The notes beneath the pieces are model-generated. The model saw nothing but the letters and a program-made list of their open reading frames with translations, searched no databases and had not been told where the DNA came from. This document shows, piece after piece, positions 4,242-25,688 of a stretch of DNA of 64,000 nt. Made by a program: the position numbers and the translations under genes. Position 1 is the first letter of the stretch, and each line of letters opens with the position of its first letter. The DNA is taken from IMG/VR virus record IMGVR_UViG_3300024308_000018, positions 124,001 through 188,000 of that record; one strand, given 5' to 3'.

Positions 4242-4281
4242 TTCTGTAAACGATAATTGTAGGGGCCGCAGTTTGGCCCCT
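4240..4281 (+). promoter_or_regulatory. promoter-like box plus hairpin
   Basis: AATTCTGTAAACGATAATTGT immediately followed by AGGGGCC-N7-GGCCCCT, with no U-tract. Confidence 0.65.
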
Positions 4282-4301
4282 TCTACTCCGAGGACAAATC
4301 A

Positions 4302-4856
4302 ATGCAACGTATTTCCCAAGTTGGTGCCATGATGGCAAACTTCGGCGAGCTGCTGACTACTATGTCGCACGCTGTTGAAGACGAAATAAACACCGCGATT
4401 CGCGACGAACAGGCGAGCGCCGCTGAACAGCTGAAGCGCACGGTTGACGACGCCAACGCCAAGATCACGAACCTCAATGCGACGAACGAGTCGCTGTCTA
4501 CGCAACTGCTGCGCAGCAACCAGCAACTCAAGGTTGCAGCCGACAAGCTGGCCGAGCTGGAAACCGAAGTCCTGCCGCTGGCTGCCATCGACGCCGACGA
4601 CGTGTTCGACAAGCTGGAAGAGCTGGACTTGGTTGTCGGCAAGCCTAACGGCGCTGGCGTGAAAGAGTCGCGCGAGCTTATCCAGAAAGTGTGCCGTGAC
4701 CTTGAACCGTTGCGTGCACGTTGCTCCCAAGAAACCCCGGCCCCGAAGCCTGCACCGAAACTTGCAGACGTTGCTGAAGCCGTGGGGAAAGCAAGCGGCG
4801 CTGCGGTCGCTAATGTAGAGGGCAACGCCGAGCCCGAGATGCCCGTCAAAGCGTAA
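4302..4856 (+). CDS. coiled-coil hypothetical protein
   Basis: GAGG RBS; heptad-like central helix. Confidence 0.8.
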   Translation: MQRISQVGAMMANFGELLTTMSHAVEDEINTAIRDEQASAAEQLKRTVDDANAKITNLNATNESLSTQLLRSNQQLKVAADKLAELETEVLPLAAIDADDVFDKLEELDLVVGKPNGAGVKESRELIQKVCRDLEPLRARCSQETPAPKPAPKLADVAEAVGKASGAAVANVEGNAEPEMPVKA

Positions 4857-4963
4857 TGGGCAATCAGCAAGTTTTATCATCATCGTTCGCAAAAGGTTTC
4901 GCGCTGAGCATTCTAATTCTTACGGCGCTGACTTCTGCACTGTCACTGGCTGCCCTAGCCTGA
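4856..4963 (+). CDS. 35-aa hydrophobic (single-TM) peptide, not in the ORF track
   Basis: TAATG coupling to the upstream stop; MGNQQVLSSSFAKGFALSILILTALTSALSLAALA. Confidence 0.5.
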   Translation: MGNQQVLSSSFAKGFALSILILTALTSALSLAALA

Positions 4964-4968
4964 CACCG

Positions 4969-4989
4969 AATTCTGTAAATAGTAATTGT
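4969..4989 (+). promoter_or_regulatory. promoter-like box
   Basis: AATTCTGTAAATAGTAATTGT upstream of the 5023 gene. Confidence 0.65.
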
Positions 4990-5022
4990 TAGTCCAACTC
5001 ACAACCCCGAAAGGAATATCGT

Positions 5023-5562
5023 ATGGCTATCGCCCCTAAGAAGAAGCAAGTTCGTTCTGACCTGATCCCTACCCGTACCAGCCGCCTGCACAACAAGAGC
5101 AGCGTTGCCGTCGGTGCTGCGGTCGCCAAGTTGTTTACCGTGCTGGTCACCTGCCGCAAGCCCGAGCAGTTTGCCGCCGTGCTGCTGAGCGACGATGACA
5201 ACAGCATCATGGTGCGCCGCAAGAAAGGCTACGGCTCTTCCAAGGTTCTGGAAGTGATGATCAGCAAGAGCGACGTTCTGGAAATCACAGGCGCTGGCGT
5301 CGGCCACGAAGCGATCATCCGCGCTGTCGGCCAAGTGCCCGAGCTGAAGCTGCCGCACCAGAAGGTCAAGAACGTTGCAGGCTGGTTGATCTGTACCGAC
5401 GCCGAGACTGGCGAGCAGACCCGCATCAACACCCGCGCCCAAGGCGTTGAAGTTTCTGTCGTCGGTGAAGACGTCAAAGAAGGCTCCGGTAAAGCCGCCC
5501 CGAAGACTGCCAAGAAAACTGGCAACGTCTCCAAGCTGCCGTCCCGCAAGCGCGAAGTGTAA
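5023..5562 (+). CDS. basic hypothetical protein
   Basis: AAGGA RBS; K-rich termini. Confidence 0.8.
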   Translation: MAIAPKKKQVRSDLIPTRTSRLHNKSSVAVGAAVAKLFTVLVTCRKPEQFAAVLLSDDDNSIMVRRKKGYGSSKVLEVMISKSDVLEITGAGVGHEAIIRAVGQVPELKLPHQKVKNVAGWLICTDAETGEQTRINTRAQGVEVSVVGEDVKEGSGKAAPKTAKKTGNVSKLPSRKREV

Positions 5563-5581
5563 GGCTACACTCCGTCCGCAA

Positions 5582-5666
5582 AAATCTGTAAACAATAATT
5601 GTTGGGAGCGCTGAGCACGGTGCTCCAGAATAAAACTGTAAACAACACAAGTAGGCAACACCGCCT
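5582..5666 (+). promoter_or_regulatory. tandem promoter-like boxes, each followed by a hairpin
   Basis: CTGTAAACAATAATTGT (5586) + GGAGCGC/GTGCTCC stem; CTGTAAACAACACAAGT (5636) + AGGC/GCCT stem. Confidence 0.65.
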
Positions 5667-5690
5667 CGTATCTATAAGGGAATTTCAGTC

Positions 5691-6488
5691 ATGGCTAAAG
5701 CTAAAACCGCAACCACCAAAACCTCCGCTAAGTCCAACAAAGCCGCTGCTGCTCCGGTGAACGCCGCAACTACTCTGCTGCATACCCTGTGCCAGTCTCT
5801 GGCTGCTGCCATTAGCGAAGACCCGAAGATCGCCAAGTTGGCTGATTCCTACGGTCTGGGTTTGGTCGGTGAGGTAGCCGACAACGAGGAAGAGGAAGAA
5901 CTCGAAGAAGAAGACGAAGAGTTCGAAGAAGAGGACGAGGAAGAAGAAGCTCCGAAGTCCAAGAAAGCCGCTTCCAAGAAAGCTCCCGCCAAAGGCGGCA
6001 AGAAAAAGAAAGCGCTGACCGCTGACGACATCATCGAAATTCTGGACGGCGACGACGCCGACGCTGCCGAGGCCGCATTCAACGATCTGGAAGACGAAGA
6101 CATGATCCGCGAGATCGCCGTCACCCTGAAGCTGGTCAAGGCCAAGGCCGCTGCCAAGACCGACGCCGACACCCTGACCGAGATGATCGGTGAGCACTTC
6201 GGCATCGGTGAAGAGGAAGAGGACGAAGAAGAAGAAGGCATCGACCCGGACGAGATGTCCGAAGCCGAACTGCTCGAATTCGTTATCGAGCACAAGCTGG
6301 CCACCAAGGTCAAAGCCAAGAAGATGGACGAGGACGAACTTCGCGCCCTCGTTGAAGAATTCCTCGAAGAAGAAGAAGAGGAAGACGAAGACGAGGAAGA
6401 GGAAGAGGAAGACGAAGAAGAGTTCGACGACGAAGAAGAGGAAGAAGAAGACGAAGACGAATTCGACGACGAGTTCGACGAAGAATAA
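5691..6488 (+). CDS. extremely acidic protein with poly-E/D tracts and two Rho-N/HeH-like helical repeats
   Basis: Three long E/D tracts; repeats DMIREIAVTLKL..KTDADTLTEMIGEHF and MSEAELLEFVIEHKL..KMDEDELRALVEEFL. Confidence 0.8.
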   Translation: MAKAKTATTKTSAKSNKAAAAPVNAATTLLHTLCQSLAAAISEDPKIAKLADSYGLGLVGEVADNEEEEELEEEDEEFEEEDEEEEAPKSKKAASKKAPAKGGKKKKALTADDIIEILDGDDADAAEAAFNDLEDEDMIREIAVTLKLVKAKAAAKTDADTLTEMIGEHFGIGEEEEDEEEEGIDPDEMSEAELLEFVIEHKLATKVKAKKMDEDELRALVEEFLEEEEEEDEDEEEEEEDEEEFDDEEEEEEDEDEFDDEFDEE

Positions 6489-10237: not shown

Positions 10238-11911
10238 ATGACAACTAAGAGAGTGGTGCGCCGACCCAAGGCCACCAAAGCTGCGAAGTCGACAGCGACC
10301 GAGATAGAATCCGGCACGCTGGTGAAAAAGCGCAAGCCTCTGCGAGCCAAGGCCACGGCAGCAACAGGCGAGCGCGAGGTCGGCACCGAAGCCCAGCTGA
10401 AGATGTCGCTGACTCCGACCGTCGACACGTACATCGAAGACAAGGAACTGCATGAATACACCGACCGCGCACTGTTCGAGTACGGTTCGTATGTCGTGCA
10501 AGACCGTGCGGTTCCCGAACTGCGCGATGGCCTGAAGCCGTCACACCGCGCGATGTTGTGGTCGGCCGTTGAACTTGGCCTGAGCCCCAGCGGTAGCTTT
10601 GCGAAGTCAGCCAAGGTTGTCGGCCATGCAATCGGTTCGTATCACCCGCACGGTGACGTCGCGTGTTATGATGCGGGTGTGTCTATCGCAAACTTCAACC
10701 CGCCTCTGCTGTGGGGCTCCGGTAACTTCGGCTCCCCAGTTGACGCACCCGCCGCGATGCGTTATTCGGAAATGAAGTTGTCACGCTTCAGCCAACTGTT
10801 CATGGCTGACAGCGGATACCTCAAGGCCGTGCCGTATCACCAGAACTTTTCTGAGGATAAGAAGTGGCCCGTCTACATGCCTGCGCTGCTGCCTATGCTG
10901 CTGCTCGCTGGCAACCCGACGATTCCGGCCTACGGTGTACGCTCCGGTAACCCCAGCTTTGAACTTGCTGGCGTTGCCCAGCTGACAATCGCGGCGTTGC
11001 GTGGTCGCAAGATCACAGCCAACGACATGATCAAGCGGCTGGTGGTGCAGCACCCCTACGGCGCTGTATGTGTTGCCGACGACGAGCAATTCGAGACCCT
11101 TATCTCGACCGGACGCGGCTCACTGCCGTTCCATCCGCAGATGATGGCCGACTACAAGCGCAAGCTGATCGTGTTGCAGAGCTACAGCCCACAAGTGTTG
11201 TCGAATGCCGTGTCCGTCGAGAAGACGATTCGTGCAATCGCCGACATGAAGGGCGTGTCGCAAGTGATGTCGTCCGGCGGCAAGAAGAACCCCGACGCGG
11301 GCACCTATGGTTGCGCCATCGCAATCACTGTTGGCCGTGGCGTTGGGGAAGACGAGTTCTACACTCTGGTGCAAGCTATCCGCAAGCGCCTGACCAAGAA
11401 CGAGTCGTACCAGCTCGGCGTCACGATACGCAAGCTGGGGGAGAAGTCGAAGTTCAGCCACTGCGACTTCCCTGCGTTCATCAACAACTGGGCCAAGTAT
11501 CGGATCTCGTTGGAGGTGGACTACCTGAACTACTTCAAGCAGCAAGCGCTCGACGCGCTCCACGTTGTGAACGGTAAACTTGTGGTTGTCGCAACCAAGG
11601 ATTCCCTTGACCGCGCTATTCACATCATCCGCACCGCGAAGGATCCGAAAGCCGCGCTGATGAAAGAGTTCAAGTTGGATGAAGTCCAAGTCGAAGCCAT
11701 CCTGAGCATGCAGCTCCGGTCGCTTGCAAAGTTGGTGCTCGACGAGCTGAAGAATATCAAAGCCAAGCTGGTCGCGGAGATCAAGGACTACGACCGTCGC
11801 CTGAAAGAACCCGGCCAGTCAGCCGCCGTGGACTTGAAGGAGCGACTGAAGAAGTACCTTGCCAAGCCAGACATGACTGTAAGCGGATTGCCTGTCTACA
11901 CGAAGGAATAA
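10238..11911 (+). CDS. gyrA: type IIA DNA topoisomerase subunit A (GyrA/ParC-like), no C-terminal pinwheel
   Basis: RAVPELRDGLKP, YHPHGD and catalytic AAMRY motifs; only 557 aa. Confidence 0.95.
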   Translation: MTTKRVVRRPKATKAAKSTATEIESGTLVKKRKPLRAKATAATGEREVGTEAQLKMSLTPTVDTYIEDKELHEYTDRALFEYGSYVVQDRAVPELRDGLKPSHRAMLWSAVELGLSPSGSFAKSAKVVGHAIGSYHPHGDVACYDAGVSIANFNPPLLWGSGNFGSPVDAPAAMRYSEMKLSRFSQLFMADSGYLKAVPYHQNFSEDKKWPVYMPALLPMLLLAGNPTIPAYGVRSGNPSFELAGVAQLTIAALRGRKITANDMIKRLVVQHPYGAVCVADDEQFETLISTGRGSLPFHPQMMADYKRKLIVLQSYSPQVLSNAVSVEKTIRAIADMKGVSQVMSSGGKKNPDAGTYGCAIAITVGRGVGEDEFYTLVQAIRKRLTKNESYQLGVTIRKLGEKSKFSHCDFPAFINNWAKYRISLEVDYLNYFKQQALDALHVVNGKLVVVATKDSLDRAIHIIRTAKDPKAALMKEFKLDEVQVEAILSMQLRSLAKLVLDELKNIKAKLVAEIKDYDRRLKEPGQSAAVDLKERLKKYLAKPDMTVSGLPVYTKE

Positions 11912-11956
11912 AATCTGTAAACAGTAGTTTGAGAGGGTGGAGTTATTCACCCTCTC
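11911..11956 (+). promoter_or_regulatory. promoter-like box plus 11-bp hairpin
   Basis: AAATCTGTAAACAGTAGTTT then GAGAGGGTGGA-GTTA-TTCACCCTCTC. Confidence 0.6.
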
Positions 11957-12045
11957 CCTTCTCGTCTCGGGATACTAATTTCGTATTCCCCTGACGCCGC
12001 CCACTTGGGCACTACGTGTAACCACGTCCATAAAGGAAAGACCCG

Positions 12046-13470
12046 ATGTCTCTATCGCTGATGCAGAAGAACCTGACTCATGCTCACCAAGTCCTGAGCA
12101 ACGGTCTGGTGTCTCTGCGCACCTCGAACAAACCCAGCCAGATCGCCCTGACAATCAACGGGGCCACTGCTGCGGCCACCGCTGATTTGCGGGCAGCGCC
12201 GAAGCAGTCTGTTGCAGTGATTACCGACCTTGCGGACGCGCGTGCTGTGCTCGACACAGTGAACAAGCGCCTGACCAGCCTCGCCAAAGTTGTGGCTGCT
12301 CGCAAGATTGCATTCGCTGACTATCGCAAAGAATGCAACTCACTCTCCGCCATGTTGGAAGGTGTCGAGTTGCAGCTGACCAACGCGCGCAACCTCATTG
12401 TCAAAGCTGAGACCGTGCGTGATGGAACAGCACCCGCCGAATCGATCACAACACCTGCATTCCTTGCTGCCCTGATCTCGACCGACTCCAAGGTTGAAAT
12501 CAAAGAGCTGACCAAGCGCTGGTTCGCTGGCCTGCCCCGCTCTGAGGCCGACCAGTATGCCCGCCGTCGCGGCCCGCTCGTTGACCAGCTGCTGTCCTAC
12601 ACGGATTCCGCCACGGCTCGCCTCGTACTGGAAACCGTCAGCGGCGCTCTGCTCAACACCGCCGACGACGCGGCCAAGCGCCAAGACACTGAAAGCGTCG
12701 TGCGTGCCACCCAAGCCGTGGAACTCACCCGCAAGCTCGAACGCGAATATGGCCCGAAGCTGAGTGCCCTGAACATCCGCCCCAACGGCATCAAGATGAT
12801 CAGCCTGCCCCTGCGCGTGACGTTCGCCCATCGCAGCATTCGCCCAGACACGCTGGCGAAGAACGGCATGAAGGCCCAGCCCTTCTCCTACGAGAAATTC
12901 AACAACGGGACTTTCATCGTCGAAGACCAATCGCTGATCGTAATGCGCCGCTCTGACGCAGAAGCATTCCATCGCGAATCCCAAAATGAGGCGCGGCGTT
13001 CGAACAGCGACCTCAAGATGCTCAAGAACCTCAAAGCCAGCTTGAAGAAAGTTGACACCGAGATTGCTGAGTTGACTGCCGCCAGTACGCAGCAGAAGAG
13101 CCAACGCGCACGCGTTGCAATCGCTGACCAACTGGCTGACCTGCGCGCTCGTTCCGACGAGTTGCAGAAGTCCATTACTACGGTGCAAGAAGGTGCGGAG
13201 GCAGCCAAGAAGCTGATCTCCAACAAGCACAAGCAAGCAAAGAAATCCTCTGACGAGATGGTGCGCGCGTATGCGGATCACATTCTCGACCTAGCCAACT
13301 CGAAGCTCTCCGTGGAATACGCGAAAGTTTCGGGCAAGCTGCTGCACAAGGTCAAGAACGTCGACTACGTGTATATGTGGGTCGCACCCAAGCACTACGT
13401 CCGAGCACTGCACGCGCTCTCCGGTGGTAACGGGGATCTTGTGACCAGCTGGACGCTCGCTTGGGCGTAA
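12046..13470 (+). CDS. coiled-coil-rich hypothetical protein
   Basis: AAGGA RBS; long helical segments; no family recognised. Confidence 0.8.
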   Translation: MSLSLMQKNLTHAHQVLSNGLVSLRTSNKPSQIALTINGATAAATADLRAAPKQSVAVITDLADARAVLDTVNKRLTSLAKVVAARKIAFADYRKECNSLSAMLEGVELQLTNARNLIVKAETVRDGTAPAESITTPAFLAALISTDSKVEIKELTKRWFAGLPRSEADQYARRRGPLVDQLLSYTDSATARLVLETVSGALLNTADDAAKRQDTESVVRATQAVELTRKLEREYGPKLSALNIRPNGIKMISLPLRVTFAHRSIRPDTLAKNGMKAQPFSYEKFNNGTFIVEDQSLIVMRRSDAEAFHRESQNEARRSNSDLKMLKNLKASLKKVDTEIAELTAASTQQKSQRARVAIADQLADLRARSDELQKSITTVQEGAEAAKKLISNKHKQAKKSSDEMVRAYADHILDLANSKLSVEYAKVSGKLLHKVKNVDYVYMWVAPKHYVRALHALSGGNGDLVTSWTLAWA

Positions 13471-13474
13471 CCAC

Positions 13475-13999
13475 GTGTCTGATCTGAAGGCAGCCGCCAT
13501 TACGAATGGTGCTCATACGCAGTGCTATATCTGTGAGCATTACTTCGCATCGATCCACTGGCACCACACTGTGCCGAGATCGTTGGGCGGCCACGCCGAA
13601 CTTCAGATACCGCTCTGTGGCTCATGCCACACAGCACTGCACGCAAAGGCTAGTGCAGTGTTCGCTATCGTTAGAGGAACGGGCAAGAAGAAGGTAGTCG
13701 GGAGTTACTGGGCCAGAGTATCGGACGAACAAAGAGCCGAGCGATGGTTACGGGTATTAGTTGGCGCTATGCTATTCCCTCCAGTCGAGCGCGAGGATAA
13801 AACGACCGTGCTACCTGCCTTGACCGTAGACCCATATCGTCGATACGTGCTTGAAGTGATCAAGCAGGATGCGAATCTGAAAAGCATATCACAGGCTTTG
13901 CTTTTCTGTATCGACTATACCGCATCGAGTAAAGGACTTAACAATAATGAAAAAGAAAACAAAACAAGGAAATCAGGGAATAACCGTAAGCTGTGGTGA
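13475..13999 (+). CDS. HNH-fold protein
   Basis: CYIC...HWHHTVPRSLGG...IPLCGSCH motif. Confidence 0.8.
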   Translation: MSDLKAAAITNGAHTQCYICEHYFASIHWHHTVPRSLGGHAELQIPLCGSCHTALHAKASAVFAIVRGTGKKKVVGSYWARVSDEQRAERWLRVLVGAMLFPPVEREDKTTVLPALTVDPYRRYVLEVIKQDANLKSISQALLFCIDYTASSKGLNNNEKENKTRKSGNNRKLW

Positions 14000-14834
14000 C
14001 TGCGAGGGATTATCGCGGCGCGCACTGCACCCGGTTGGCGACGACGGGAAGGCTGCCAAGGTCTGCTCCCAAACGGGAACGTTGCCGGAAACCAAGCCCT
14101 GTGCTCGGTTCCGCCCTGACGTGTTTTCTTTGGATACGGACGCGCGTGTTGCTTTGCGTCAGCTGTCCAATCTCATAAAGAAGTTCGATCCACGTGACCT
14201 ACGTATTGTGGCAGCAACCCTGATGAACGAGCACAAGACTCGCAATCACGGGCTGCGCTTTGGACAGCGGATGTTCGTTCGCTATCGCTCCTACGTTGGC
14301 CGTGACTACACCAGCAACTTCATGGCTTGCACCGTGATGGATGCTGGTGATGGCGTAGTGCGCCTGATGTCCAGTGATGGGCAGACGGCACTGACCTTCG
14401 ACCTGCCAGCGTCCGGCACGTTCGATGGCCCTGTGCTGTACGATGCTCCGTCTTTCAGACCTCTACTGAAGAAGATGAAACGGGATAAGAAATTCTTCGA
14501 CCCTCAGAACGAGACCAGTCGTCGCCTTGCTCCTGAAGAGCCAGTGACGTACAAGGTACGCAAGGAAGAACTGGGGGCAGTCATTCTCGATATTGAAGAC
14601 GCGTTGCGATCCAAACCGAAGCGCAAACGTGGAGCACAGGGCGACCGCAATCTGGTTGACCTGCGTGACATGGTAGACAAGTTGGAGCGAGGTGAATTCC
14701 TCGGCCGCGTTGGTGACGAGTTCACTGACGACGATGTTCAAGTGCTTGGCGATTCCGCTTACCGTAAAGGCAAGAAAAAGAAACGCCCCGTCCGCCGCTC
14801 TAGCGGTGAACTCGAACTGTCCTCCCTTGTCTAA
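13947..14834 (+). CDS. Cys-rich (Zn-finger-like) hypothetical protein with C-terminal GELELSSLV
   Basis: CGDC..C..C N-terminus; K/R-rich tail. Confidence 0.75.
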   Translation: MKKKTKQGNQGITVSCGDCEGLSRRALHPVGDDGKAAKVCSQTGTLPETKPCARFRPDVFSLDTDARVALRQLSNLIKKFDPRDLRIVAATLMNEHKTRNHGLRFGQRMFVRYRSYVGRDYTSNFMACTVMDAGDGVVRLMSSDGQTALTFDLPASGTFDGPVLYDAPSFRPLLKKMKRDKKFFDPQNETSRRLAPEEPVTYKVRKEELGAVILDIEDALRSKPKRKRGAQGDRNLVDLRDMVDKLERGEFLGRVGDEFTDDDVQVLGDSAYRKGKKKKRPVRRSSGELELSSLV

Positions 14835-14857
14835 CTTCAATCTTGAGAGCCTACACA

Positions 14858-15973
14858 ATGCGTAACGACCTGCACACTTTGATCGCCGCCAACGAACTCG
14901 ACGTCAACTCTCCGATTTTCGAAGAGGTGATTCTCTACCTACTGCGAGCCTACGGCAACCCGATCAAGGTGTACCATCAACGTTTTGCGAAAGCCTGCTC
15001 GTTCCATAGTGAACTGACTCCGGCGCGTTTCCGTACTGAACTGCACGACACTGAATACGTTGGTGTCGCGCTGAAATTCTTTGCCGGGTACGCGGCCCTC
15101 AAGTACGGCAAGGTGACTAACCGCCACCTTGTCGCGACTGCCCCCAAGTACGGCGTCAGCAAGTGCGACGCCAAGCGCGTGATTGCGATGTTCGGCCAGC
15201 GTCAGTACCTCAATGCGGTTCGCTCCCGCTTGACTGCTGAAGGCTTCACAGCCGAAAGCCTCGACCTCAATGCGTACCGTGATGCACTGCAACTCGGACA
15301 CACTGTTATCGTTGGCCTCACCGACTCCATCGCCAAGCACGTGAACCGCAACCTGCGCTGGGTGGCGAAAGCCCACAACTGCCGGACTGCGGATCTGAAC
15401 ACTGAGATCACGGCGCAAGTGATCTCTGTCTACTACGGCATGCTGCCGACACACAAGAGTGACGACCACGTGCAGAACTATCTGTGCAGCGCCCTGCATA
15501 GCCGCATCAAGAACCTCGCCAACTACCACTCCGCTGAGAAGCGCAAGCGGCAGGTGAAGGTGACTGAGAACGGCGAAGTGCGGTACAGCCTGATTGAGGC
15601 GAGCGAATCGCACCTCAACAAGTTCAGCTCTGGCAGTGACTCCGCTGTGTCTATCGAAGAGATGGGAGGATGCGACGATTCGCTTGAGCTTCACAATTTC
15701 GAATTCACACGCTCGGTCGATTCGCTGTTCAAGATCGCGAAGTGCAAACCCAAACGCTTTGCCCTCTACAGCGTATTGCTCGGTCGGAATGTTCCGGCCT
15801 TCGCAGAGTTCCTGCGACAAAAACGACTGCTCCGCTCTGAAACCAAAACAGTGCGCGAGTGGTTGATTGATAAGCCTGTGGCATATCTGGCTGATGTCCT
15901 CGGTAAATGGCTCGGGGTCTCCCCCGCCCACGTCCAGAAGGGCATGACTGAAATGGCGATGATTCTCCTATGA
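14858..15973 (+). CDS. putative divergent phage RNA polymerase sigma factor
   Basis: Region-2-like IAKHVNRNLRWVAK..ADLNTEI..NYLCSALHSRIKNLANYHSAEKRK; C-terminal HTH-like VLGKWLGVSPAHVQK. Confidence 0.55.
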   Translation: MRNDLHTLIAANELDVNSPIFEEVILYLLRAYGNPIKVYHQRFAKACSFHSELTPARFRTELHDTEYVGVALKFFAGYAALKYGKVTNRHLVATAPKYGVSKCDAKRVIAMFGQRQYLNAVRSRLTAEGFTAESLDLNAYRDALQLGHTVIVGLTDSIAKHVNRNLRWVAKAHNCRTADLNTEITAQVISVYYGMLPTHKSDDHVQNYLCSALHSRIKNLANYHSAEKRKRQVKVTENGEVRYSLIEASESHLNKFSSGSDSAVSIEEMGGCDDSLELHNFEFTRSVDSLFKIAKCKPKRFALYSVLLGRNVPAFAEFLRQKRLLRSETKTVREWLIDKPVAYLADVLGKWLGVSPAHVQKGMTEMAMILL

Positions 15974-16311
15974 TGAATGAAGCAATTATTTTCTCGTTCT
16001 TTCGTAACGCTCAGACGCCTGACTATCGGCGTCTCGTAATCGCAACTGCGATTGCCGAACTGTCCACCTTGCAAGACCCTGTTAGCATGGGCAAGTTGTT
16101 GAACCGTCTTCAGAAGCAACATGCGTTTACGCCTGACGCCTGTGAGGACGCCATTGCCGCATTACGATCCGTAGCTGGGTTCAATGCGCTGACCGTGTGG
16201 AACGCGAGCAAAACCCAACTGATGCGCCTGAAGGCCAGCCCCAAGCTCGATGCTTGGATGCAAGCCAACAGCGTGATCGTTGATGGGGTACGTCAAACGC
16301 TCGCAGCTTAG
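15970..16311 (+). CDS. hypothetical protein (possible winged helix)
   Basis: ATGA overlap with the upstream gene. Confidence 0.65.
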   Translation: MMNEAIIFSFFRNAQTPDYRRLVIATAIAELSTLQDPVSMGKLLNRLQKQHAFTPDACEDAIAALRSVAGFNALTVWNASKTQLMRLKASPKLDAWMQANSVIVDGVRQTLAA

Positions 16312-16319
16312 GTGGATCG

Positions 16320-17801
16320 ATGGAGCTACACTCACTAAACCTTGAGCTGCGCGCGCTGCGCAGCTTAACCGATGTCAAAGTCGACAAGCACTACCGCTTG
16401 TCTCTGCTCGGGCGACTCAATGCCAAACACTTCGGTGTGGATCCGACACGCAATGCCTTTGTGCGTTTGCAGCGTCTGGCCCGAGAAGACGGCGAGCTGC
16501 CTGACTGGGAAGCACTGTGTGAAGACCCCAGACTGAACGAAGAGGCGCGCGAGTTACTGCGTGACGAGGACGGCGTTAAGCCCGTACTGAAGAAGCACTA
16601 CGACAAGTTCGCTAGGGCTATGGGCAAGTACAGCAAACGTCGCGCACTGCTCGCCATCTCTCGGATGATCAACGATGGGCTGAAGGAAAAGGAGAGTGAA
16701 GATTTTGACGAGGAAGATCTACACGCCCGCATAATCGAAGGCATGCAGAACATCGGTCGCGACGCAATCGCCGAAGCCAAGATCTACGGCTTTGGTGCTG
16801 GGCAACGCGGCTCTGGCCTGAAGCTGGCGAAGCAGGTGCTAGATGCTCCGAAAGAAAAGCTGTACCTGACGGGACTGACGGAATACGATCAGCGCAACTT
16901 CGGCCTGCCTACTACAGGCGTCGTGCTGCTGGCGGCCACAACCTCTGGCGGTAAGTCTGCCGTGTCCATGAACATCGGGCACGACATGGCTATGCTCAAC
17001 GGGATTGCCGTCAGCCGGATCACGTTGGAGATGACGGCAGAGCAAGAGACCAAGCGCTATATGTCGGCAATGTCCGGCGTCGAGTTCAACAAGATCAAGA
17101 ACGCGACCCTGACCCGTGCCGAGAAGCGCCGTATCTACAACGCCATGGAGAAGATTGACCGCGACTTGGAGAAAGCTGGCGGTGCGTTCAAGTACACCTC
17201 GCCCCCTCGCGGGATGACTATGGACGACGTGCTGTATATGACGGCAGCCAACAACGACCAAGTTACCATCATCGACTACATCGGCCTGCTCGAAGACATC
17301 GACACCAACAACCAAGCCGCAACCCTCAGTGAGGCTGTGCGTAAAGCCAAGATTCACGCCACTCAAAACCAGCGCCTCTACATCATCCTTGTTCAGCTCG
17401 ATAGTGAGAGCGGTAAAGTCCGTTACTCACGTGGTATGAACGAGCATGCGGACGTGCTGATTACGTGGAGCTACGTGGATGCGGAAGTGCGCGCCACCCA
17501 CGAACTGCCAATGGAAGTTGAGAAAGCGCGTGACGGCGAACTGTTTGGGTTCCTCGTTGCCGAAGACTTTGCGACCATGAGTGCGGGTGCCCGTGCAGCC
17601 AAGGCCCAAGCCAGTCGGGGCGACACGAACCGCGACGACATGCGGCGAGAGCGACCTGAAGCCAAAGACGACGATGCGCCTACCCCCAAGAAGAAAAAGC
17701 GCCCCGCCGGATCTGGTGACCGTGAACGCTTCAGCCGGAAACCCAAAGACAAGCCGAAGGCCCGTGGCTTTGGTGAATTGGAGTTGAGTTCAGTTGTTTA
17801 A
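16320..17801 (+). CDS. dnaB: DnaB-like replicative helicase
   Basis: Walker A AATTSGGKS; ITLEM; IIDYIGLL; ILVQL; EKARDG. Confidence 0.9.
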   Translation: MELHSLNLELRALRSLTDVKVDKHYRLSLLGRLNAKHFGVDPTRNAFVRLQRLAREDGELPDWEALCEDPRLNEEARELLRDEDGVKPVLKKHYDKFARAMGKYSKRRALLAISRMINDGLKEKESEDFDEEDLHARIIEGMQNIGRDAIAEAKIYGFGAGQRGSGLKLAKQVLDAPKEKLYLTGLTEYDQRNFGLPTTGVVLLAATTSGGKSAVSMNIGHDMAMLNGIAVSRITLEMTAEQETKRYMSAMSGVEFNKIKNATLTRAEKRRIYNAMEKIDRDLEKAGGAFKYTSPPRGMTMDDVLYMTAANNDQVTIIDYIGLLEDIDTNNQAATLSEAVRKAKIHATQNQRLYIILVQLDSESGKVRYSRGMNEHADVLITWSYVDAEVRATHELPMEVEKARDGELFGFLVAEDFATMSAGARAAKAQASRGDTNRDDMRRERPEAKDDDAPTPKKKKRPAGSGDRERFSRKPKDKPKARGFGELELSSVV

Positions 17802-18504: not shown

Positions 18505-21500
18505 ATGACACGATCCAAGAAGCCGGATCTGACCGCGCGCCGCCGTTTGGTAGCGCGCCGTTCAGCCGCGACAGATTTCCTGATAGGTCTGGGTGGCGCT
18601 GACGCCGCCACAGACGATGCTGATATGGGCGTAGACATTGGTGATGCGCAAGGCGTCCCCAGTGAGATCGGCACTGCAAAGTCCATCGACATTCGCCAGA
18701 TTATCAAGCAAGCTCAGAAGACTCGTGTCCCCCGCGACTTGAAGTTCGACGACTCTTCTATGCCCGACGCTGCCAACTTCTACCGCTGGTGCACGGGCTC
18801 CGAATTCCTCAACGCCGAGCCATACCTTGAGCAGGTGCTGATCGGTGTACGTCTCTTTGGTGAATACTGCCCCATTTGCAGTGACACCGAGTGGATGAAG
18901 ATTGAAAACCATGAGCCGCAGGAAGGCTTGGCCGGAATGTTGGCTAAGGTGGTGCTGCTCGAACATGGCGTGTGCCCCAAGTGTAAGGGTCGCCGCTCTG
19001 AGTTCTTCCGCACCAACAAGCTCAAGTTCTACAACGAACTCGGGGTGAACGCCGGACAACGTTGTGTGACTGGTGACCAGCTGCTGTCTACTGGTGTCGG
19101 CCTGCGCCGCGTGCGTGACCTGCTGCCAGATGCAGAGTATGGCGAGAACGAAGTTGAAGGTCTGACCGCTGCCCTGACCGAGGGCCCTCTCAAGGTCAAC
19201 AAGATCGTGCGCATTGAAGCAGGTGAACGTCTGGTGTGTGCAACACTAGCCAACGGCACCGAGATCAAAGGCACCGCTACTCACGGCATCGAAGGCTGGG
19301 CCAAGAGCTACCGCCCGCTGCAAGACGCCGCCAAGTCTCCCGTGGTTATCGCCACCAATCACCACATCGGTGAGCCATTCCCAATTCGCGAGTACGCCGA
19401 AGGCATGGTGCGCCAAGGGGCCCTCCCCGAGAACTACAGCGCCAAGGCCATCCGCAACTACGCGATGATGCAGACAATGGCCCACGCCGTTATGGGTACG
19501 CTGCTCGTCCACAACAACGTTCCCTATGTCGAGGGCGGGCCAACACTTGACACCGTGTTCAAGTCGCTGACCGCTGGCTGCTACCGTGACAACAAGATGG
19601 TGCAGCTGCCCGACTACCTGTTGTCGAACGCTGCTCCCCTACTGCACACATTCTTCCGCACCCTCTTCCCTGACGACGAGATCGGCTTGTCCGTGATGGT
19701 CGACTCAGAGGAACTGGCGCGAGAGATTCAGGCCCTTGCCATTGCGTGCGGTTGGCCCTGCATGCGTGACGGTCACAGCCTTTGGCTCGACCAGTTGGCC
19801 TACAACGACTTCAGCGAGCTGCGCGAAACCGTGCTGCGCGTAGAACCCACTTTTTCAGCCGAGCGCTGGGATCGTGGGTCTCTTGCGTCTGCACTCGAAA
19901 ACATTGAGATCGACAGCCCCTTGTACTACCTCAAGCGGCTGGTCGACGGCGATTACGCGGTGTTCAATGCTGCGGTGGCCGACATCGAGCCCGAGGACAC
20001 TTGGACGTTCGAAGTCCCGAGCGGCCAGCGCTACATGATCGACAACATCGTGTGCGAAAACAGCGGCAAGTCCGTGGTGGTAGCAATGCTGTCCACGTAC
20101 ATGACGCACCGCGTGCTCAAGATGCAGAAGCCGACGCGCGTCTACGGTATCGGCGACAACCAGATCCTGCAAGGCACGTTCGTGGCCCTGACTCAGGCTC
20201 AGGCAAAGGACACGTTGTGGGAGCCGTACTTCGGCTACATCGTGGCGAGCCCTTGGTTCCAACGTTACCATGCGTTGATCAAGCGCTACGAATCCCTGTA
20301 CGGTGTCGAGGTGATGAAGATTCGGGACACGTTCGTTCTGTATCGCCATCGCAACCTCATTGTGTTCCCAGCGGGCCCCGACAAGCGTACCCTTCGTGGT
20401 CGAACTCGTATCTTCTACGCGATAGATGAAATCGGTTGGTTCGACAACGATGCGTCCAAGAACAAGATCAAGACAGGCGCTGCCGAAGTCTCGATTGCGT
20501 TGGAACGTTCGTGCCTGACTGTGCGGTCGGCGGAGGGACGGCTGGTCGCCAGTGGCAATGACATGTGCTACACGGCATATGGCTTCAACGTCAGTAGCCC
20601 GTCAGACTTCCGCGACAAGATCTGTGAGATTGTCCGGCAGGCTGAGACCAGTAACAAGATATTGGGTATTCATGCCCCGACGTGGAAGATGAACCCGAAC
20701 GTTACGCGGGAGATGCTGGAAGAAGAATTCCGCAAGAACCCGATAGCGGCGGCCCGAGATTATGGCGCGCAGCCGCCAGTGTCAGCGAACCCATTCATCT
20801 CGCCCGGTACGGTGGACGAGTGTATGCGTGACGTTGGCCGTAACGAGGTGGTCTACAACCAAGCTACCGACCGACGCAGTAATGGGATCTCGGTTGAGCG
20901 GACGGCCTACGGCAAGATCACCAAGATCAAGCAAGTCGACCGCCCCAGTGTGCTGGCGATGGATGCTGGGGAAACCAATAACAGTTTCGCGCTGTCCTGT
21001 ATGTCGCTGGTAAATGGTATCCCCAGCGTTGACCTGCTCGTTGAGATCATGCCGAGCCCCGGCGAACCGCTCAACTACACGTTGATCTTTGACCACATCA
21101 TTGTACCGATGATCAAGGCACGCAACGTTAAGGTGCTGCTCGCCGACCGTTGGAACTCCACGAAACTCCTGCAAGATGCGCTGGCCCTTGGGCTCGTACA
21201 GATTGCCAAGAAGTATTCGCTGAAGTACAACGACATGTGGGACGTCAAGAACCAGATGCAAGGCGGCACGTTCTCTTATCCACGTTCGCAGTTTGTGAAA
21301 TCCGTAATCGAGCTGCTGCACGATCAGGACTTGACCAACTACCCGGCATGCTTCGCCAACAAACCTGTCGAGCACTTCATGTACCAGTGCGTCACGATCC
21401 AAGATAGCCGCAATCAGGTTCTCAAGGGCGTGGGGCTCACCGATGACTTGTGGCGAGCAACAGCGTTGGCGGCCTACGGACTCAACAGTCCGGACTACGC

Positions 21501-21663
21501 ACCGTTTCTTGTAAATAGCCCTAACAGGCACATCGACCGGAACCCACAACGTCTCGGCGTTATTGGCAGTGCCAAAGCCGTCGGTACGGGCAGCGGTGCT
21601 CAGGCGCGCAGCGGAACGATTGGTAATTTCACAGCGGTACTCAGTTCAAGGAGAGCAAAATGA
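18505..21663 (+). CDS. terL: terminase large subunit, intein-containing
   Basis: Walker A reconstituted as AGQR|SGKS; Walker B YAIDEIGW; nuclease LAMDAG and DDLW; adjacent to portal. Confidence 0.9.
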   Translation: MTRSKKPDLTARRRLVARRSAATDFLIGLGGADAATDDADMGVDIGDAQGVPSEIGTAKSIDIRQIIKQAQKTRVPRDLKFDDSSMPDAANFYRWCTGSEFLNAEPYLEQVLIGVRLFGEYCPICSDTEWMKIENHEPQEGLAGMLAKVVLLEHGVCPKCKGRRSEFFRTNKLKFYNELGVNAGQRCVTGDQLLSTGVGLRRVRDLLPDAEYGENEVEGLTAALTEGPLKVNKIVRIEAGERLVCATLANGTEIKGTATHGIEGWAKSYRPLQDAAKSPVVIATNHHIGEPFPIREYAEGMVRQGALPENYSAKAIRNYAMMQTMAHAVMGTLLVHNNVPYVEGGPTLDTVFKSLTAGCYRDNKMVQLPDYLLSNAAPLLHTFFRTLFPDDEIGLSVMVDSEELAREIQALAIACGWPCMRDGHSLWLDQLAYNDFSELRETVLRVEPTFSAERWDRGSLASALENIEIDSPLYYLKRLVDGDYAVFNAAVADIEPEDTWTFEVPSGQRYMIDNIVCENSGKSVVVAMLSTYMTHRVLKMQKPTRVYGIGDNQILQGTFVALTQAQAKDTLWEPYFGYIVASPWFQRYHALIKRYESLYGVEVMKIRDTFVLYRHRNLIVFPAGPDKRTLRGRTRIFYAIDEIGWFDNDASKNKIKTGAAEVSIALERSCLTVRSAEGRLVASGNDMCYTAYGFNVSSPSDFRDKICEIVRQAETSNKILGIHAPTWKMNPNVTREMLEEEFRKNPIAAARDYGAQPPVSANPFISPGTVDECMRDVGRNEVVYNQATDRRSNGISVERTAYGKITKIKQVDRPSVLAMDAGETNNSFALSCMSLVNGIPSVDLLVEIMPSPGEPLNYTLIFDHIIVPMIKARNVKVLLADRWNSTKLLQDALALGLVQIAKKYSLKYNDMWDVKNQMQGGTFSYPRSQFVKSVIELLHDQDLTNYPACFANKPVEHFMYQCVTIQDSRNQVLKGVGLTDDLWRATALAAYGLNSPDYAPFLVNSPNRHIDRNPQRLGVIGSAKAVGTGSGAQARSGTIGNFTAVLSSRRAK
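19063..20061 (+). mobile_element. 333-aa intein with degenerate LAGLIDADG-like region
   Basis: Starts CVTGDQLL; block B GTATH; ends IVCEN followed by extein Ser; removal restores GQRSGKS. Confidence 0.9.
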
Positions 21664-25668: not shown

Positions 25669-25688
25669 AATCTGTAAATAGTCTACGT
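25669..25688 (+). promoter_or_regulatory. promoter-like box
   Basis: AATCTGTAAATAGTCTACGT about 40 nt upstream of 25715, just after a terminator. Confidence 0.6.

What the first reader, a model, noticed from the sequence alone, without database searches (positions are those of the whole stretch)
14858..15973. Divergent sigma-factor-like protein: candidate reader of the phage promoter boxes
Seen: a central segment fits the sigma70 region-2 pattern (IAK..LRWVAK..DL..EI..NYL..ALHSRIKNLA..AEKRK), there is a C-terminal HTH-like helix pair, and there is an extra N-terminal domain of about 150 aa. Inference: a phage sigma that redirects host RNAP to the CTGTAAA or TAATT promoters. Similarity is weak and judged by eye.
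Basis: inference. Interest (0 to 1): 0.6.

Follow-up and report, generated by a model that had tools for sequence, protein, structure and literature searches.

The report
Divergent sigma-like protein of jumbo phage
This gene of an uncultured 230-kb phage that has no RNA polymerase of its own most likely encodes a very divergent sigma factor (two sigma domains behind a unique N-terminal domain) that steers the host polymerase to phage promoters; the idea was already raised tentatively for its relative in phage PaBG, and which promoters it reads is still unknown.

Summary
It belongs to a large, conserved family: PHROG 19229 "unknown function", 189 clusters at 50% identity, and 63 jumbo phages where it is always labelled "hypothetical". 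No curated sigma model passes its threshold.

Several independent weak-to-moderate signals still point to a sigma70-family protein:
- **Structure:** a high-confidence AlphaFold model (pLDDT 93) has a sigma2-like bundle (residues 137-231) and a sigma4-like HTH domain (277-371). About 22 of the 50 best PDB matches are sigma factors.
- **Profile comparison:** hhalign against ECF sigmas gives P=2e-4 for sigma2 and P=0.008 for sigma4, both above every shuffled control.
- **Family scans:** the hits that recur across members are sub-threshold matches to sigma models (Sigma70_r2, TIGR02937).
- **Literature:** HHpred gave 97% probability for the PaBG orthologue gp112.
- **Core binding:** co-folding with the beta' clamp helices gave only weak support.

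The genome shows no RNA polymerase and carries a second, more canonical phage sigma. The CTGTAAAC box is real (consensus aAAtCTGTAAACAA, 30 copies), but nothing links it to this protein rather than to the other sigma.

This is a new, divergent member of a known kind.

The parts
14858..15973 (+). CDS of the sigma-like protein (P0001, 371 aa, stop included)
   Evidence: ORF list and translation. PHROG 19229, E=4e-46. The family has 189 representatives at E<=1e-3.
14858..15265 (+). N-terminal all-alpha domain (aa 1-136), unique to this family, with nearly invariant R59 and D104
   Evidence: Model m51dfa825e3f6 has block pLDDT of about 95-99 beyond the first ten residues here. Conservation comes from A4. 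No informative fold or feature match was found. hhalign against sigma templates gives P=0.19.
15266..15550 (+). Sigma2-like helical domain (aa 137-231), carrying D179-L-x-x-E183, the loop with near-invariant P197, N207-Y-L...N219, and the basic K228-R-K-R231
15551..15685 (+). Beta-hairpin (aa 232-245) and acidic, less ordered linker (aa 246-276) between the two sigma-like domains
   Evidence: Secondary structure, with pLDDT falling to 64-78. The global hhalign places this segment opposite the ECF sigma2-sigma4 linker.
15686..15970 (+). Sigma4-like domain (aa 277-371) with the terminal helix-turn-helix (helices 341-352 and 356-370), near-invariant F315 and L319, and an insertion of about 24 aa before the HTH
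15970..16311 (+). Small ORF (113 aa, phrog_27753) whose ATG overlaps the stop of the sigma-like gene (ATGA); conserved next to it in all relatives examined; function unknown
   Evidence: Synteny is seen in Yoloswag, PaBG, Lu11 and fHe-Yen9-02. The Atlas search was uninformative.
11912..11956 (+). Nearest upstream copy of the aAAtCTGTAAACAA box (CTGTAAAC at 11915-11922), followed by a hairpin (about 11931-11956). It sits in the 134-nt gap that opens the tightly packed + strand gene array containing the sigma-like gene.

Best explanation
The gene encodes a highly divergent member of the sigma70 family found in PaBG/Y3/Yoloswag-type jumbo phages.

**Architecture.** A family-specific all-alpha N-terminal domain of about 136 aa is followed by a sigma2-like domain, a linker with a beta-hairpin and an acidic stretch, and a sigma4-like HTH domain. 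This is the two-domain layout of group-4 (ECF) sigmas with an extra N-terminal domain.

**Proposed mechanism.** The phage has no RNA polymerase. The proposal is that this protein binds the host core enzyme and directs it to a class of phage promoters, most likely middle or late ones. In this proposal sigma2 contacts the beta' clamp helices and sigma4 contacts the beta flap. It would work alongside, or in succession with, the second and more canonical phage sigma encoded at 81.0-82.1 kb of the genome.

**What is shown.** The ORF, its wide conservation, the two sigma-like domains in the correct order, and the absence of detectable polymerase genes.

**What is inferred.** Binding to core, promoter-specific initiation, and the timing of expression.

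**What is unknown.** Which promoter it reads. The aAAtCTGTAAACAA box is one candidate. The role of the N-terminal domain is also unknown.
For: - **Foldseek.** Top rows against PDB and BFVD are mostly sigma chains, but none is significant (E>0.1).
- **Profile comparison.** hhalign against 35 sigma sequences gives P=2.1e-4 for sigma2, P=0.008 for sigma4 and P=3.5e-4 for a collinear global alignment of 171 columns. The N-terminal domain gives P=0.19. Real scores of 27.7 and 18.3 compare with shuffled maxima of 15.1 and 13.3 and reversed-template scores of 12.5 and 13.0.
- **Family scans.** Sigma70_r2 is the Pfam family hit by the most members, jointly with DUF3189 (3 of 130 each; best E 0.004 for Sigma70_r2). 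TIGR02937 sigma70-ECF is hit by 2 of 9 members tested (E about 0.004), spanning sigma2 into sigma4.
- **Literature.** PaBG gene 112 is the tblastn hit H68. It was called a possible sigma factor with HHpred probability 97.2% (PMC7412058).
- **Genome context.** No beta, beta' or T7-type RNA polymerase domain was found. Iyer et al. place Lu11 and PaBG in subgroup 2.2, and describe group 2 phages as lacking a polymerase and all encoding sigma factors (PMC7824862).
- **Core binding.** Co-folding residues 137-235 with E. coli beta' 240-330 gave weak support: score 0.33, best of 3 controls 0.09. The mark was reached by 58 of 80 solved complexes and 2 of 110 mismatched pairs. At 0.60 or under it was reached by only 7 of those 80 solved complexes and by both mismatches that passed. 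Runs agree in at least 90% of contacts, and partner pLDDT is at least 62.
Against: - No curated model passes. Pfam and NCBIfam give nothing for this protein, and relatives reach only about 17 bits against cut-offs of 24 and 42.9.
- A profile of 140 family members finds no sigma among PDB sequences.
- Foldseek E-values are above 0.1.
- hhalign probability is only 46% without secondary-structure scoring.
- The co-fold is rated weak, [quoted passage not shown].
- The gene sits in a conserved block with a topoisomerase-labelled protein and DnaB, which would also fit a replication role.
- There is no direct evidence on expression timing, core binding or promoter recognition.
Confidence: 0.62

Rival explanations
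1. It is a replication protein, for example a DnaB helicase loader or an origin-binding initiator. Its helical bundles and HTH would then only resemble sigma domains.
Against: None of those rows covers more than one bundle. Sigma rows cover both domains in the right order. The sequence-profile signal is specific to sigma templates and in register with the structural alignment. The same block also holds terminase and portal genes, so position does not define function. From general knowledge, T4 gene 55 also lies among replication and recombination genes.
Confidence: 0.1
2. It is sigma-derived but is not an initiation factor. It could be a DNA-binding transcription activator or repressor. It could instead be an RNAP-binding appropriator or decoy that modifies host holoenzyme specificity, in the manner of T4 MotA/AsiA or gp33, without replacing sigma.
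For: The family lacks the aromatic-rich region 2.3 of primary sigmas. Only Y208 aligns with the conserved Trp. The phage already has a canonical sigma. A large, conserved N-terminal domain of unknown role is present. Support for core binding is only weak.
Against: Both domains that a sigma needs are retained, collinear and conserved over 189 clusters. ECF sigmas likewise lack most aromatic residues of region 2.3 (general knowledge of ECF sigma structures). The motif pattern D-L-x-x-E ... N-Y-L-x-R...N...N parallels the ECF pattern D-L-x-Q-E ... T-W-L-x-R-I-A-x-N.
Confidence: 0.18
3. It is a conserved phage protein of unrelated function, and the sigma resemblance is a coincidence of all-alpha folds.
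Against: Five independent methods all return the same family, for two separate domains, in the correct order and register: fold search, hhalign with controls, Pfam, NCBIfam and published HHpred.
Confidence: 0.1

Closest known systems
Pseudomonas phage PaBG gene 112 product (PaBG_00112, AGS81997.1), with orthologues in Erwinia phages Y3, Yoloswag and Alexandra, Dickeya phages AD1 and JA11, Yersinia phage fHe-Yen9-02 and Pseudomonas phage Lu11 (PHROG 19229)
   Same: Same family: tblastn 22-30% identity over 74-94% of the protein for most records (Lu11 only 35% coverage), and PHROG E=4e-46. Same length (about 370 aa). Same gene neighbourhood: topoisomerase-labelled protein, this gene, small ORF, DnaB, then terminase. 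PaBG gp112 was tentatively called a sigma factor from HHpred (PMC7412058).
   Different: Only 22-30% identical. All database records still read "hypothetical protein". The closest relatives (43-95% identity) are known only from metagenomes.
Group 4 (ECF) sigma factors, e.g. E. coli RpoE/sigmaE and M. tuberculosis SigE, SigK, SigL and SigH
   Same: Two-domain sigma2-linker-sigma4 layout without sigma3. These give the best structural and profile matches. Motifs are parallel: D-L-x-x-E in region 2.1/2.2 and [NT]-[YW]-L-x-R...N in region 2.3/2.4.
   Different: It has an extra N-terminal domain of 136 aa, a longer linker with a beta-hairpin, and an insertion of about 24 aa in sigma4. It fails PF04542, PF08281, PF04545 and TIGR02937 thresholds. 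No anti-sigma partner is evident.
The phage's own second sigma (genome 81,001-82,104; phrog_17569 "RNA polymerase sigma factor"; orthologue of PaBG gene 118)
   Same: Similar length (367 aa), with the sigma2 region in the middle of the protein. It is conserved in the same four relatives.
   Different: It is clearly recognisable as a sigma (PHROG E=3e-94, Sigma70_r2 17-19 bits, published HHpred 99.9%). Similarity to the present family is not significant (hhalign P=0.077, sigma2 region only).
T4 gp55 late sigma (with gp33 and the gp45 clamp)
   Same: It is a phage-encoded, highly divergent sigma that redirects host RNAP. Its gene lies among replication genes, and its promoters are a single short block (general knowledge). 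The candidate box here is also a single block.
   Different: From general knowledge, gp55 is about 185 aa, has only a sigma2-like domain and carries a clamp-binding tail. The present protein has a sigma4-like domain and an N-terminal domain and no such tail. No gp55 PHROG was hit.
Sigma-like specificity subunits of jumbo-phage polymerases (AR9 gp226, phiKZ gp68)
   Different: They serve phage-encoded multisubunit polymerases. This genome shows no such polymerase.

Membership tests
sigma70 family | Sigma2 domain (regions 2.1-2.4 helical bundle) | tested here: met
sigma70 family | Sigma4 domain (regions 4.1-4.2, HTH) C-terminal to sigma2 | tested here: met
sigma70 family | Scores above the curated thresholds of the family models (PF04542, PF04545, PF08281, TIGR02937) | tested here: not met
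   This protein gets no hit. Relatives reach about 17 bits against cut-offs of 24 and 42.9.
sigma70 family | Binds RNAP core through the beta' clamp helices | tested here: inconclusive
   Co-fold with E. coli beta' 240-330: weak support, score 0.33, best of 3 controls 0.09. The mark was reached by 58 of 80 solved complexes and 2 of 110 mismatched pairs. At 0.60 or under it was reached by only 7 of those 80 solved complexes and by both mismatches that passed. Runs agree in at least 90% of contacts, and partner pLDDT is at least 62. The host is unknown, so E. coli beta' served as a proxy.
sigma70 family | Confers promoter-specific initiation on core RNAP | not testable with these tools
   This needs in vitro transcription or in vivo 5'-end mapping.
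ECF (group 4) sigma | Only sigma2 and sigma4, about 170-220 aa, usually paired with an anti-sigma | tested here: not met
   The protein is 371 aa, with an additional conserved N-terminal domain of 136 aa and a 45-aa linker. No anti-sigma was recognised next to it. The 113-aa neighbour is unassigned.
T4 gp55-type late sigma | Small sigma2-only protein with a C-terminal clamp-binding tail; membership of the gp55 family | tested here: not met
   The PHROG scan returns only phrog_19229. A sigma4-like domain is present. The C-terminus ...EMAMILL is part of the last HTH helix.
PHROG 19229 / PaBG gp112 family | Full-length sequence match and conserved neighbourhood | tested here: met
   E=4.2e-46 over residues 20-367. 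Synteny holds in four relatives.

The most novel reading that the evidence does not exclude
This family would be a distinct, phage-only class of sigma. Its conserved N-terminal domain would couple it to the replication machinery encoded around it (DnaB, the topoisomerase-like protein, or their shared GELELSS[LV]V tails), in analogy to clamp-activated T4 late transcription. The protein would read the single-block aAAtCTGTAAACAA promoters without a -35 element.
Probability: 0.12. Interest if true: 0.7.

Novelty: new member of a known kind. Interest (0 to 1): 0.45.

Why it matters
Most jumbo phages lack their own polymerase and are thought to reprogram the host enzyme with phage sigmas, yet this has hardly been studied for the PaBG/Y3/Lu11 clade.

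If this family is a working sigma, these phages carry a two-sigma cascade. One member is invisible to standard annotation: PHROG lists it as "unknown function" and every GenBank record as "hypothetical".

Recognising it would improve annotation of at least 63 sequenced jumbo phages and about 190 metagenomic clusters. It would also give a concrete protein to test for middle or late promoter control in cultured relatives that infect Erwinia, Dickeya, Yersinia and Pseudomonas.

Tried and rejected
- **Direct family and PDB sequence searches.** Pfam, NCBIfam and PDB sequence searches with the single protein gave only noise. A profile of 140 members against PDB sequences also gave only noise.
- **DNA search.** Megablast of 6 kb against the phage collection found no match.
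- **Foldseek.** Neither model gave a match at E<=0.001 against PDB.
- **ESM Atlas.** The feature and shape searches were uninformative for the N-terminal domain, the whole model and the 113-aa neighbour. The N-terminal domain therefore remains unassigned.
- **RpoE word search.** The word search with E. coli RpoE returned only orthologues at 86% identity or more. It was useless as a diverse template. Thin templates gave non-significant hhalign results: P=0.1 with a single sequence and P=0.024 with six E. coli sigmas.
- **Failed search set-ups.** `genome search` with 'relatives' and with 'of' are not available for virus or W records. Two alignments exceeded the residue limit of the family scan.
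- **Motif in relatives.** The exact CTGTAAAC word is not enriched in Yoloswag, PaBG, Lu11 or fHe-Yen9-02. The box could therefore not be tied to the conserved protein by co-conservation.
- **RNA evidence.** Metatranscriptome contigs overlap the gene. As contigs from mixed libraries they show neither transcription nor 5' ends.
- **Helicase-loader idea.** This was considered because of synteny. It was ranked low because no loader or initiator fold covers the protein.

Full report
**The object.** The window is bases 124,001-188,000 of a 229,746-bp IMG/VR virus record that CheckV rates as complete. GC content is 56.6%. The finding corresponds to an ORF on the + strand from the ATG at 14858 to the stop at 15971-15973, encoding 371 aa (P0001). 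An upstream TTG at 14843 is not the start, because all close homologues begin at the same Met.

**Conservation and context.**
- Pfam finds nothing.
- PHROGs places the protein in phrog_19229, "unknown function" (E=4e-46).
- tblastn finds it in 63 jumbo-phage records, always annotated "hypothetical protein". These are Erwinia phages of the Y3, Yoloswag and Alexandra types, Dickeya phages AD1 and JA11, Yersinia phage fHe-Yen9-02, and Pseudomonas phages PaBG, HRDY3 and Lu11. Identity is 21-30%.
- The word search gives 11 metagenomic relatives at 43-95% identity.
- The exhaustive profile search gives 189 clusters at 50% identity with E<=1e-3, nearly all 350-400 aa long.
- The neighbourhood is conserved in Yoloswag, PaBG, Lu11 and fHe-Yen9-02. 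The order is an HNH-like small protein (in this phage), a 295-aa protein of phrog_17701 labelled "DNA topoisomerase", this gene, a 113-aa ORF whose ATG overlaps its stop, DnaB, a 233-aa ORF, then the large terminase.
- Upstream lie the two topoisomerase II subunits. Downstream lie portal and baseplate genes.
- From 12,046 to about 48,400 the genes form a tightly packed + strand array.

**Is it a sigma? Fold.** With only 12 sequences the model was poor (pLDDT 67). With 130 diverse family members it became confident (pLDDT 93.1, pTM 0.72).

The model has four parts:
- an all-alpha N-terminal domain (residues 1-136);
- a helical bundle (137-231);
- a beta-hairpin and an acidic, less ordered linker (232-276);
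- a C-terminal helical domain (277-371) ending in a helix-turn-helix.

Foldseek gives no significant PDB match, but its top rows are mostly sigma chains of holoenzyme structures.

The Foldseek-independent search of 48,161 PDB representatives returns sigma factors in about 22 of its 50 best entries:
- SigW, SigK, SigL, SigH, SigR, RpoS, sigma32 and SigA domain 2;

**Is it a sigma? Sequence profiles.** A profile of the family finds no sigma among PDB sequences, so I compared profile with profile.

Thin templates gave little. A single RpoE sequence gave P=0.1, and six E. coli sigmas gave P=0.024. The aligned segments were nevertheless already the ones expected from the structure.

I then built a 35-sequence template (Neff 6) from three sources:
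- 19 ECF sigmas from five gammaproteobacterial genomes;
- RpoE orthologues;
- the six E. coli sigmas.

| Query segment | Result | Aligned regions |
|---|---|---|
| sigma2 (137-235) | score 27.7, P=2.1e-4, 69 columns | residues 144-222 vs RpoE 19-87 |
| sigma4 (277-371) | score 18.3, P=0.008 | residues 347-366 vs the RpoE HTH 158-177 |
| sigma2 through sigma4, global | P=3.5e-4, 171 collinear columns | not separately recorded |
| N-terminal domain (1-136) | P=0.19 | not relevant |

Sixty column-shuffled templates gave 7.5 +/- 1.7 (maximum 15.1) for sigma2 and 7.3 +/- 1.6 (maximum 13.3) for sigma4. The reversed template gave 12.5 and 13.0.

The family consensus D-L-x-x-E-L ... H-x-x-N-Y-L-x-R-x-x-x-N-x-x-x-N aligns with the ECF pattern D-L-x-Q-E ... 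F-x-T-W-L-x-R-I-A-x-N. The nearly invariant residues of the family fall into three groups:
- P197, N219 and R231 in or just after sigma2;
- F315 and L319 in sigma4;
- R59 and D104 in the N-terminal domain.

**Is it a sigma? Family scans and literature.** When 130 members were scanned individually, Sigma70_r2 matched as many members as any Pfam family, tied with DUF3189. Each matched 3 members, and the best E for Sigma70_r2 was 0.004. Two of nine members tested hit TIGR02937 sigma70-ECF at E of about 0.004, across sigma2 into sigma4. All these hits are below the curated cut-offs.

Independently, Evseev et al. 2020 reported that PaBG gene 112 is "possibly" a sigma factor. HHpred gave 97.2% probability (E=0.2), with 96.9% to SigmaE. 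They judged the function uncertain (PMC7412058). PaBG_00112 is exactly the tblastn hit for this protein.

**Does the phage need it?** No beta, beta' or T7-type polymerase domain is detectable in the genome. Iyer et al. 2021 place Lu11 and PaBG in subgroup 2.2. They describe group 2 jumbo phages as lacking a polymerase and all encoding sigma factors (PMC7824862).

The genome also holds a second, more canonical sigma at 81,001-82,104:
- It matches phrog_17569 "RNA polymerase sigma factor" at E=3e-94 and Sigma70_r2 at 17-19 bits.
- It is conserved in all four relatives tested.
- In PaBG it lies where that paper's sigma70-like gene 118 is.

The clade therefore carries two sigma-like proteins. This fits a temporal cascade but does not prove one.

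**Core binding.** I co-folded residues 137-235 with E. coli beta' residues 240-330 (the clamp helices). The verdict was weak support:
- The score was 0.33, and the best of 3 controls was 0.09.
- The mark was reached by 58 of 80 solved complexes and 2 of 110 mismatched pairs.
- At 0.60 or under it was reached by only 7 of those 80 solved complexes and by both mismatches that passed.
- Runs agree in at least 90% of their contacts, and partner pLDDT is at least 62.

This nudges the odds upward but proves nothing. It may simply reflect likeness to solved sigma-beta' complexes.

**The promoter boxes.** CTGTAAAC occurs 25 times in the genome, against about 5 expected from base composition. With CTGTAAA[CT] there are 30 copies, and they share flanks. 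The consensus is aAAtCTGTAAACAA, a single block with no second conserved element.

Where a strand could be assigned, most copies are co-oriented with the local genes (14 against 4). They lie either 15-80 nt upstream of start codons or just after a stop codon and before a hairpin. "TAATT" is a TAATTGT two bases downstream of the box in three neighbouring copies, not a separate class.

One copy at 11915 opens the gene array that contains the sigma-like gene. Between 12,000 and 64,000 the only other CTGTAAA[CT] copy is a CTGTAAAT variant at 25,672. The box is thus a credible phage-specific regulatory signal.

Nothing links the box to this protein rather than to the second sigma or to another factor. 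The copies that sit directly in front of terminator-like hairpins are awkward for a simple promoter reading. The exact word is not enriched in four distant relatives.

**Occurrence.** The DNA is found nearly intact in 16 runs from subsurface, groundwater, wetland, fish-gut, bird and wastewater metagenomes. In all, 20 runs from 11 studies hold at least part of it. Short contigs of the gene occur in four metatranscriptome libraries. That does not prove transcription.

**Verdict.** The best explanation is a very divergent sigma70-family protein with an ECF-like two-domain core and a unique N-terminal domain, used to direct host RNAP to phage promoters.
- I put about 0.8 on sigma ancestry and fold.
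- I put about 0.6 on its acting as a true initiation factor.

The rivals are a sigma-derived regulator or appropriator, a replication protein, and coincidence. It fails the curated thresholds of the sigma models, so I file it as "works like, and probably descends from, a sigma" rather than as a certified family member.

The idea is not new for the family, since PaBG gp112 was flagged in 2020. I therefore rate it a new, divergent member of a known kind, of moderate interest.

Noticed in passing
window 14810-14834 and 17777-17801: The phrog_17701 "topoisomerase"-labelled protein (13947-14834) and DnaB (16320-17801) both end in a K/R-rich linker followed by GELELSS[LV]V. No other ORF or six-frame stretch of the 229.7-kb genome has this tail. 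It may be a shared docking peptide for a common partner.
   Followed up: partly
window 18505-21663: The large terminase is 1052 aa, and PHROG 17415 matches it in two stretches (C-terminal part 491-1039). The inserted segment begins CVTGDQLL right after NAGQR and ends IVCEN before SGKS. That places it inside the Walker A loop, as in terminase inteins. Pfam recognised no intein family.
   Followed up: partly
window 4240-5700: Four + strand copies of the CTGTAAA(C/T) box lie at 4244, 4973, 5586 and 5636. Three are followed by TAATTGT, and some by hairpins. They sit in a stretch where only minus-strand ORFs could be called. The stretch may hold small + strand genes or non-coding RNAs.
   Followed up: no
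genome G000:81001-82104 (outside the window, about 43 kb upstream): This is a second, canonical phage sigma factor: phrog_17569 at E=3e-94 and Sigma70_r2 at 17-19 bits. It is conserved in Yoloswag, PaBG (gene 118), Lu11 and fHe-Yen9-02.
   Followed up: yes
genome G000:1-130 and 229540-229746 (outside the window): Both ends of the record carry the same 21-bp coding tandem repeat GAAGAGGAAGACCCCGACGCT. The contig was probably broken inside a repeat of a complete, circularly permuted or circularly assembled genome.
   Followed up: partly
window 15970-16311: A 113-aa ORF (phrog_27753, unknown function) is translationally coupled to the sigma-like gene through an ATGA overlap. It is conserved beside it in all relatives examined, and could be a partner or regulator. 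The Atlas search was uninformative.
   Followed up: partly
window 13475-13999: A small HNH-endonuclease-like ORF matches sub-threshold in Pfam (HNH_5/HNH, E=2e-4 to 1e-3). It is inserted between the 474-aa conserved ORF and the topoisomerase-like gene.
   Followed up: no
window 11801-17800: The phage occurs in metagenomes from subsurface, groundwater, wetland, fish gut, bird and wastewater samples. In all, 20 runs from 11 studies hold at least part of the stretch, and 16 of them hold half of its words or more. Short contigs of this stretch are present in wastewater and leaf-litter metatranscriptome libraries. The host remains unknown.
   Followed up: partly
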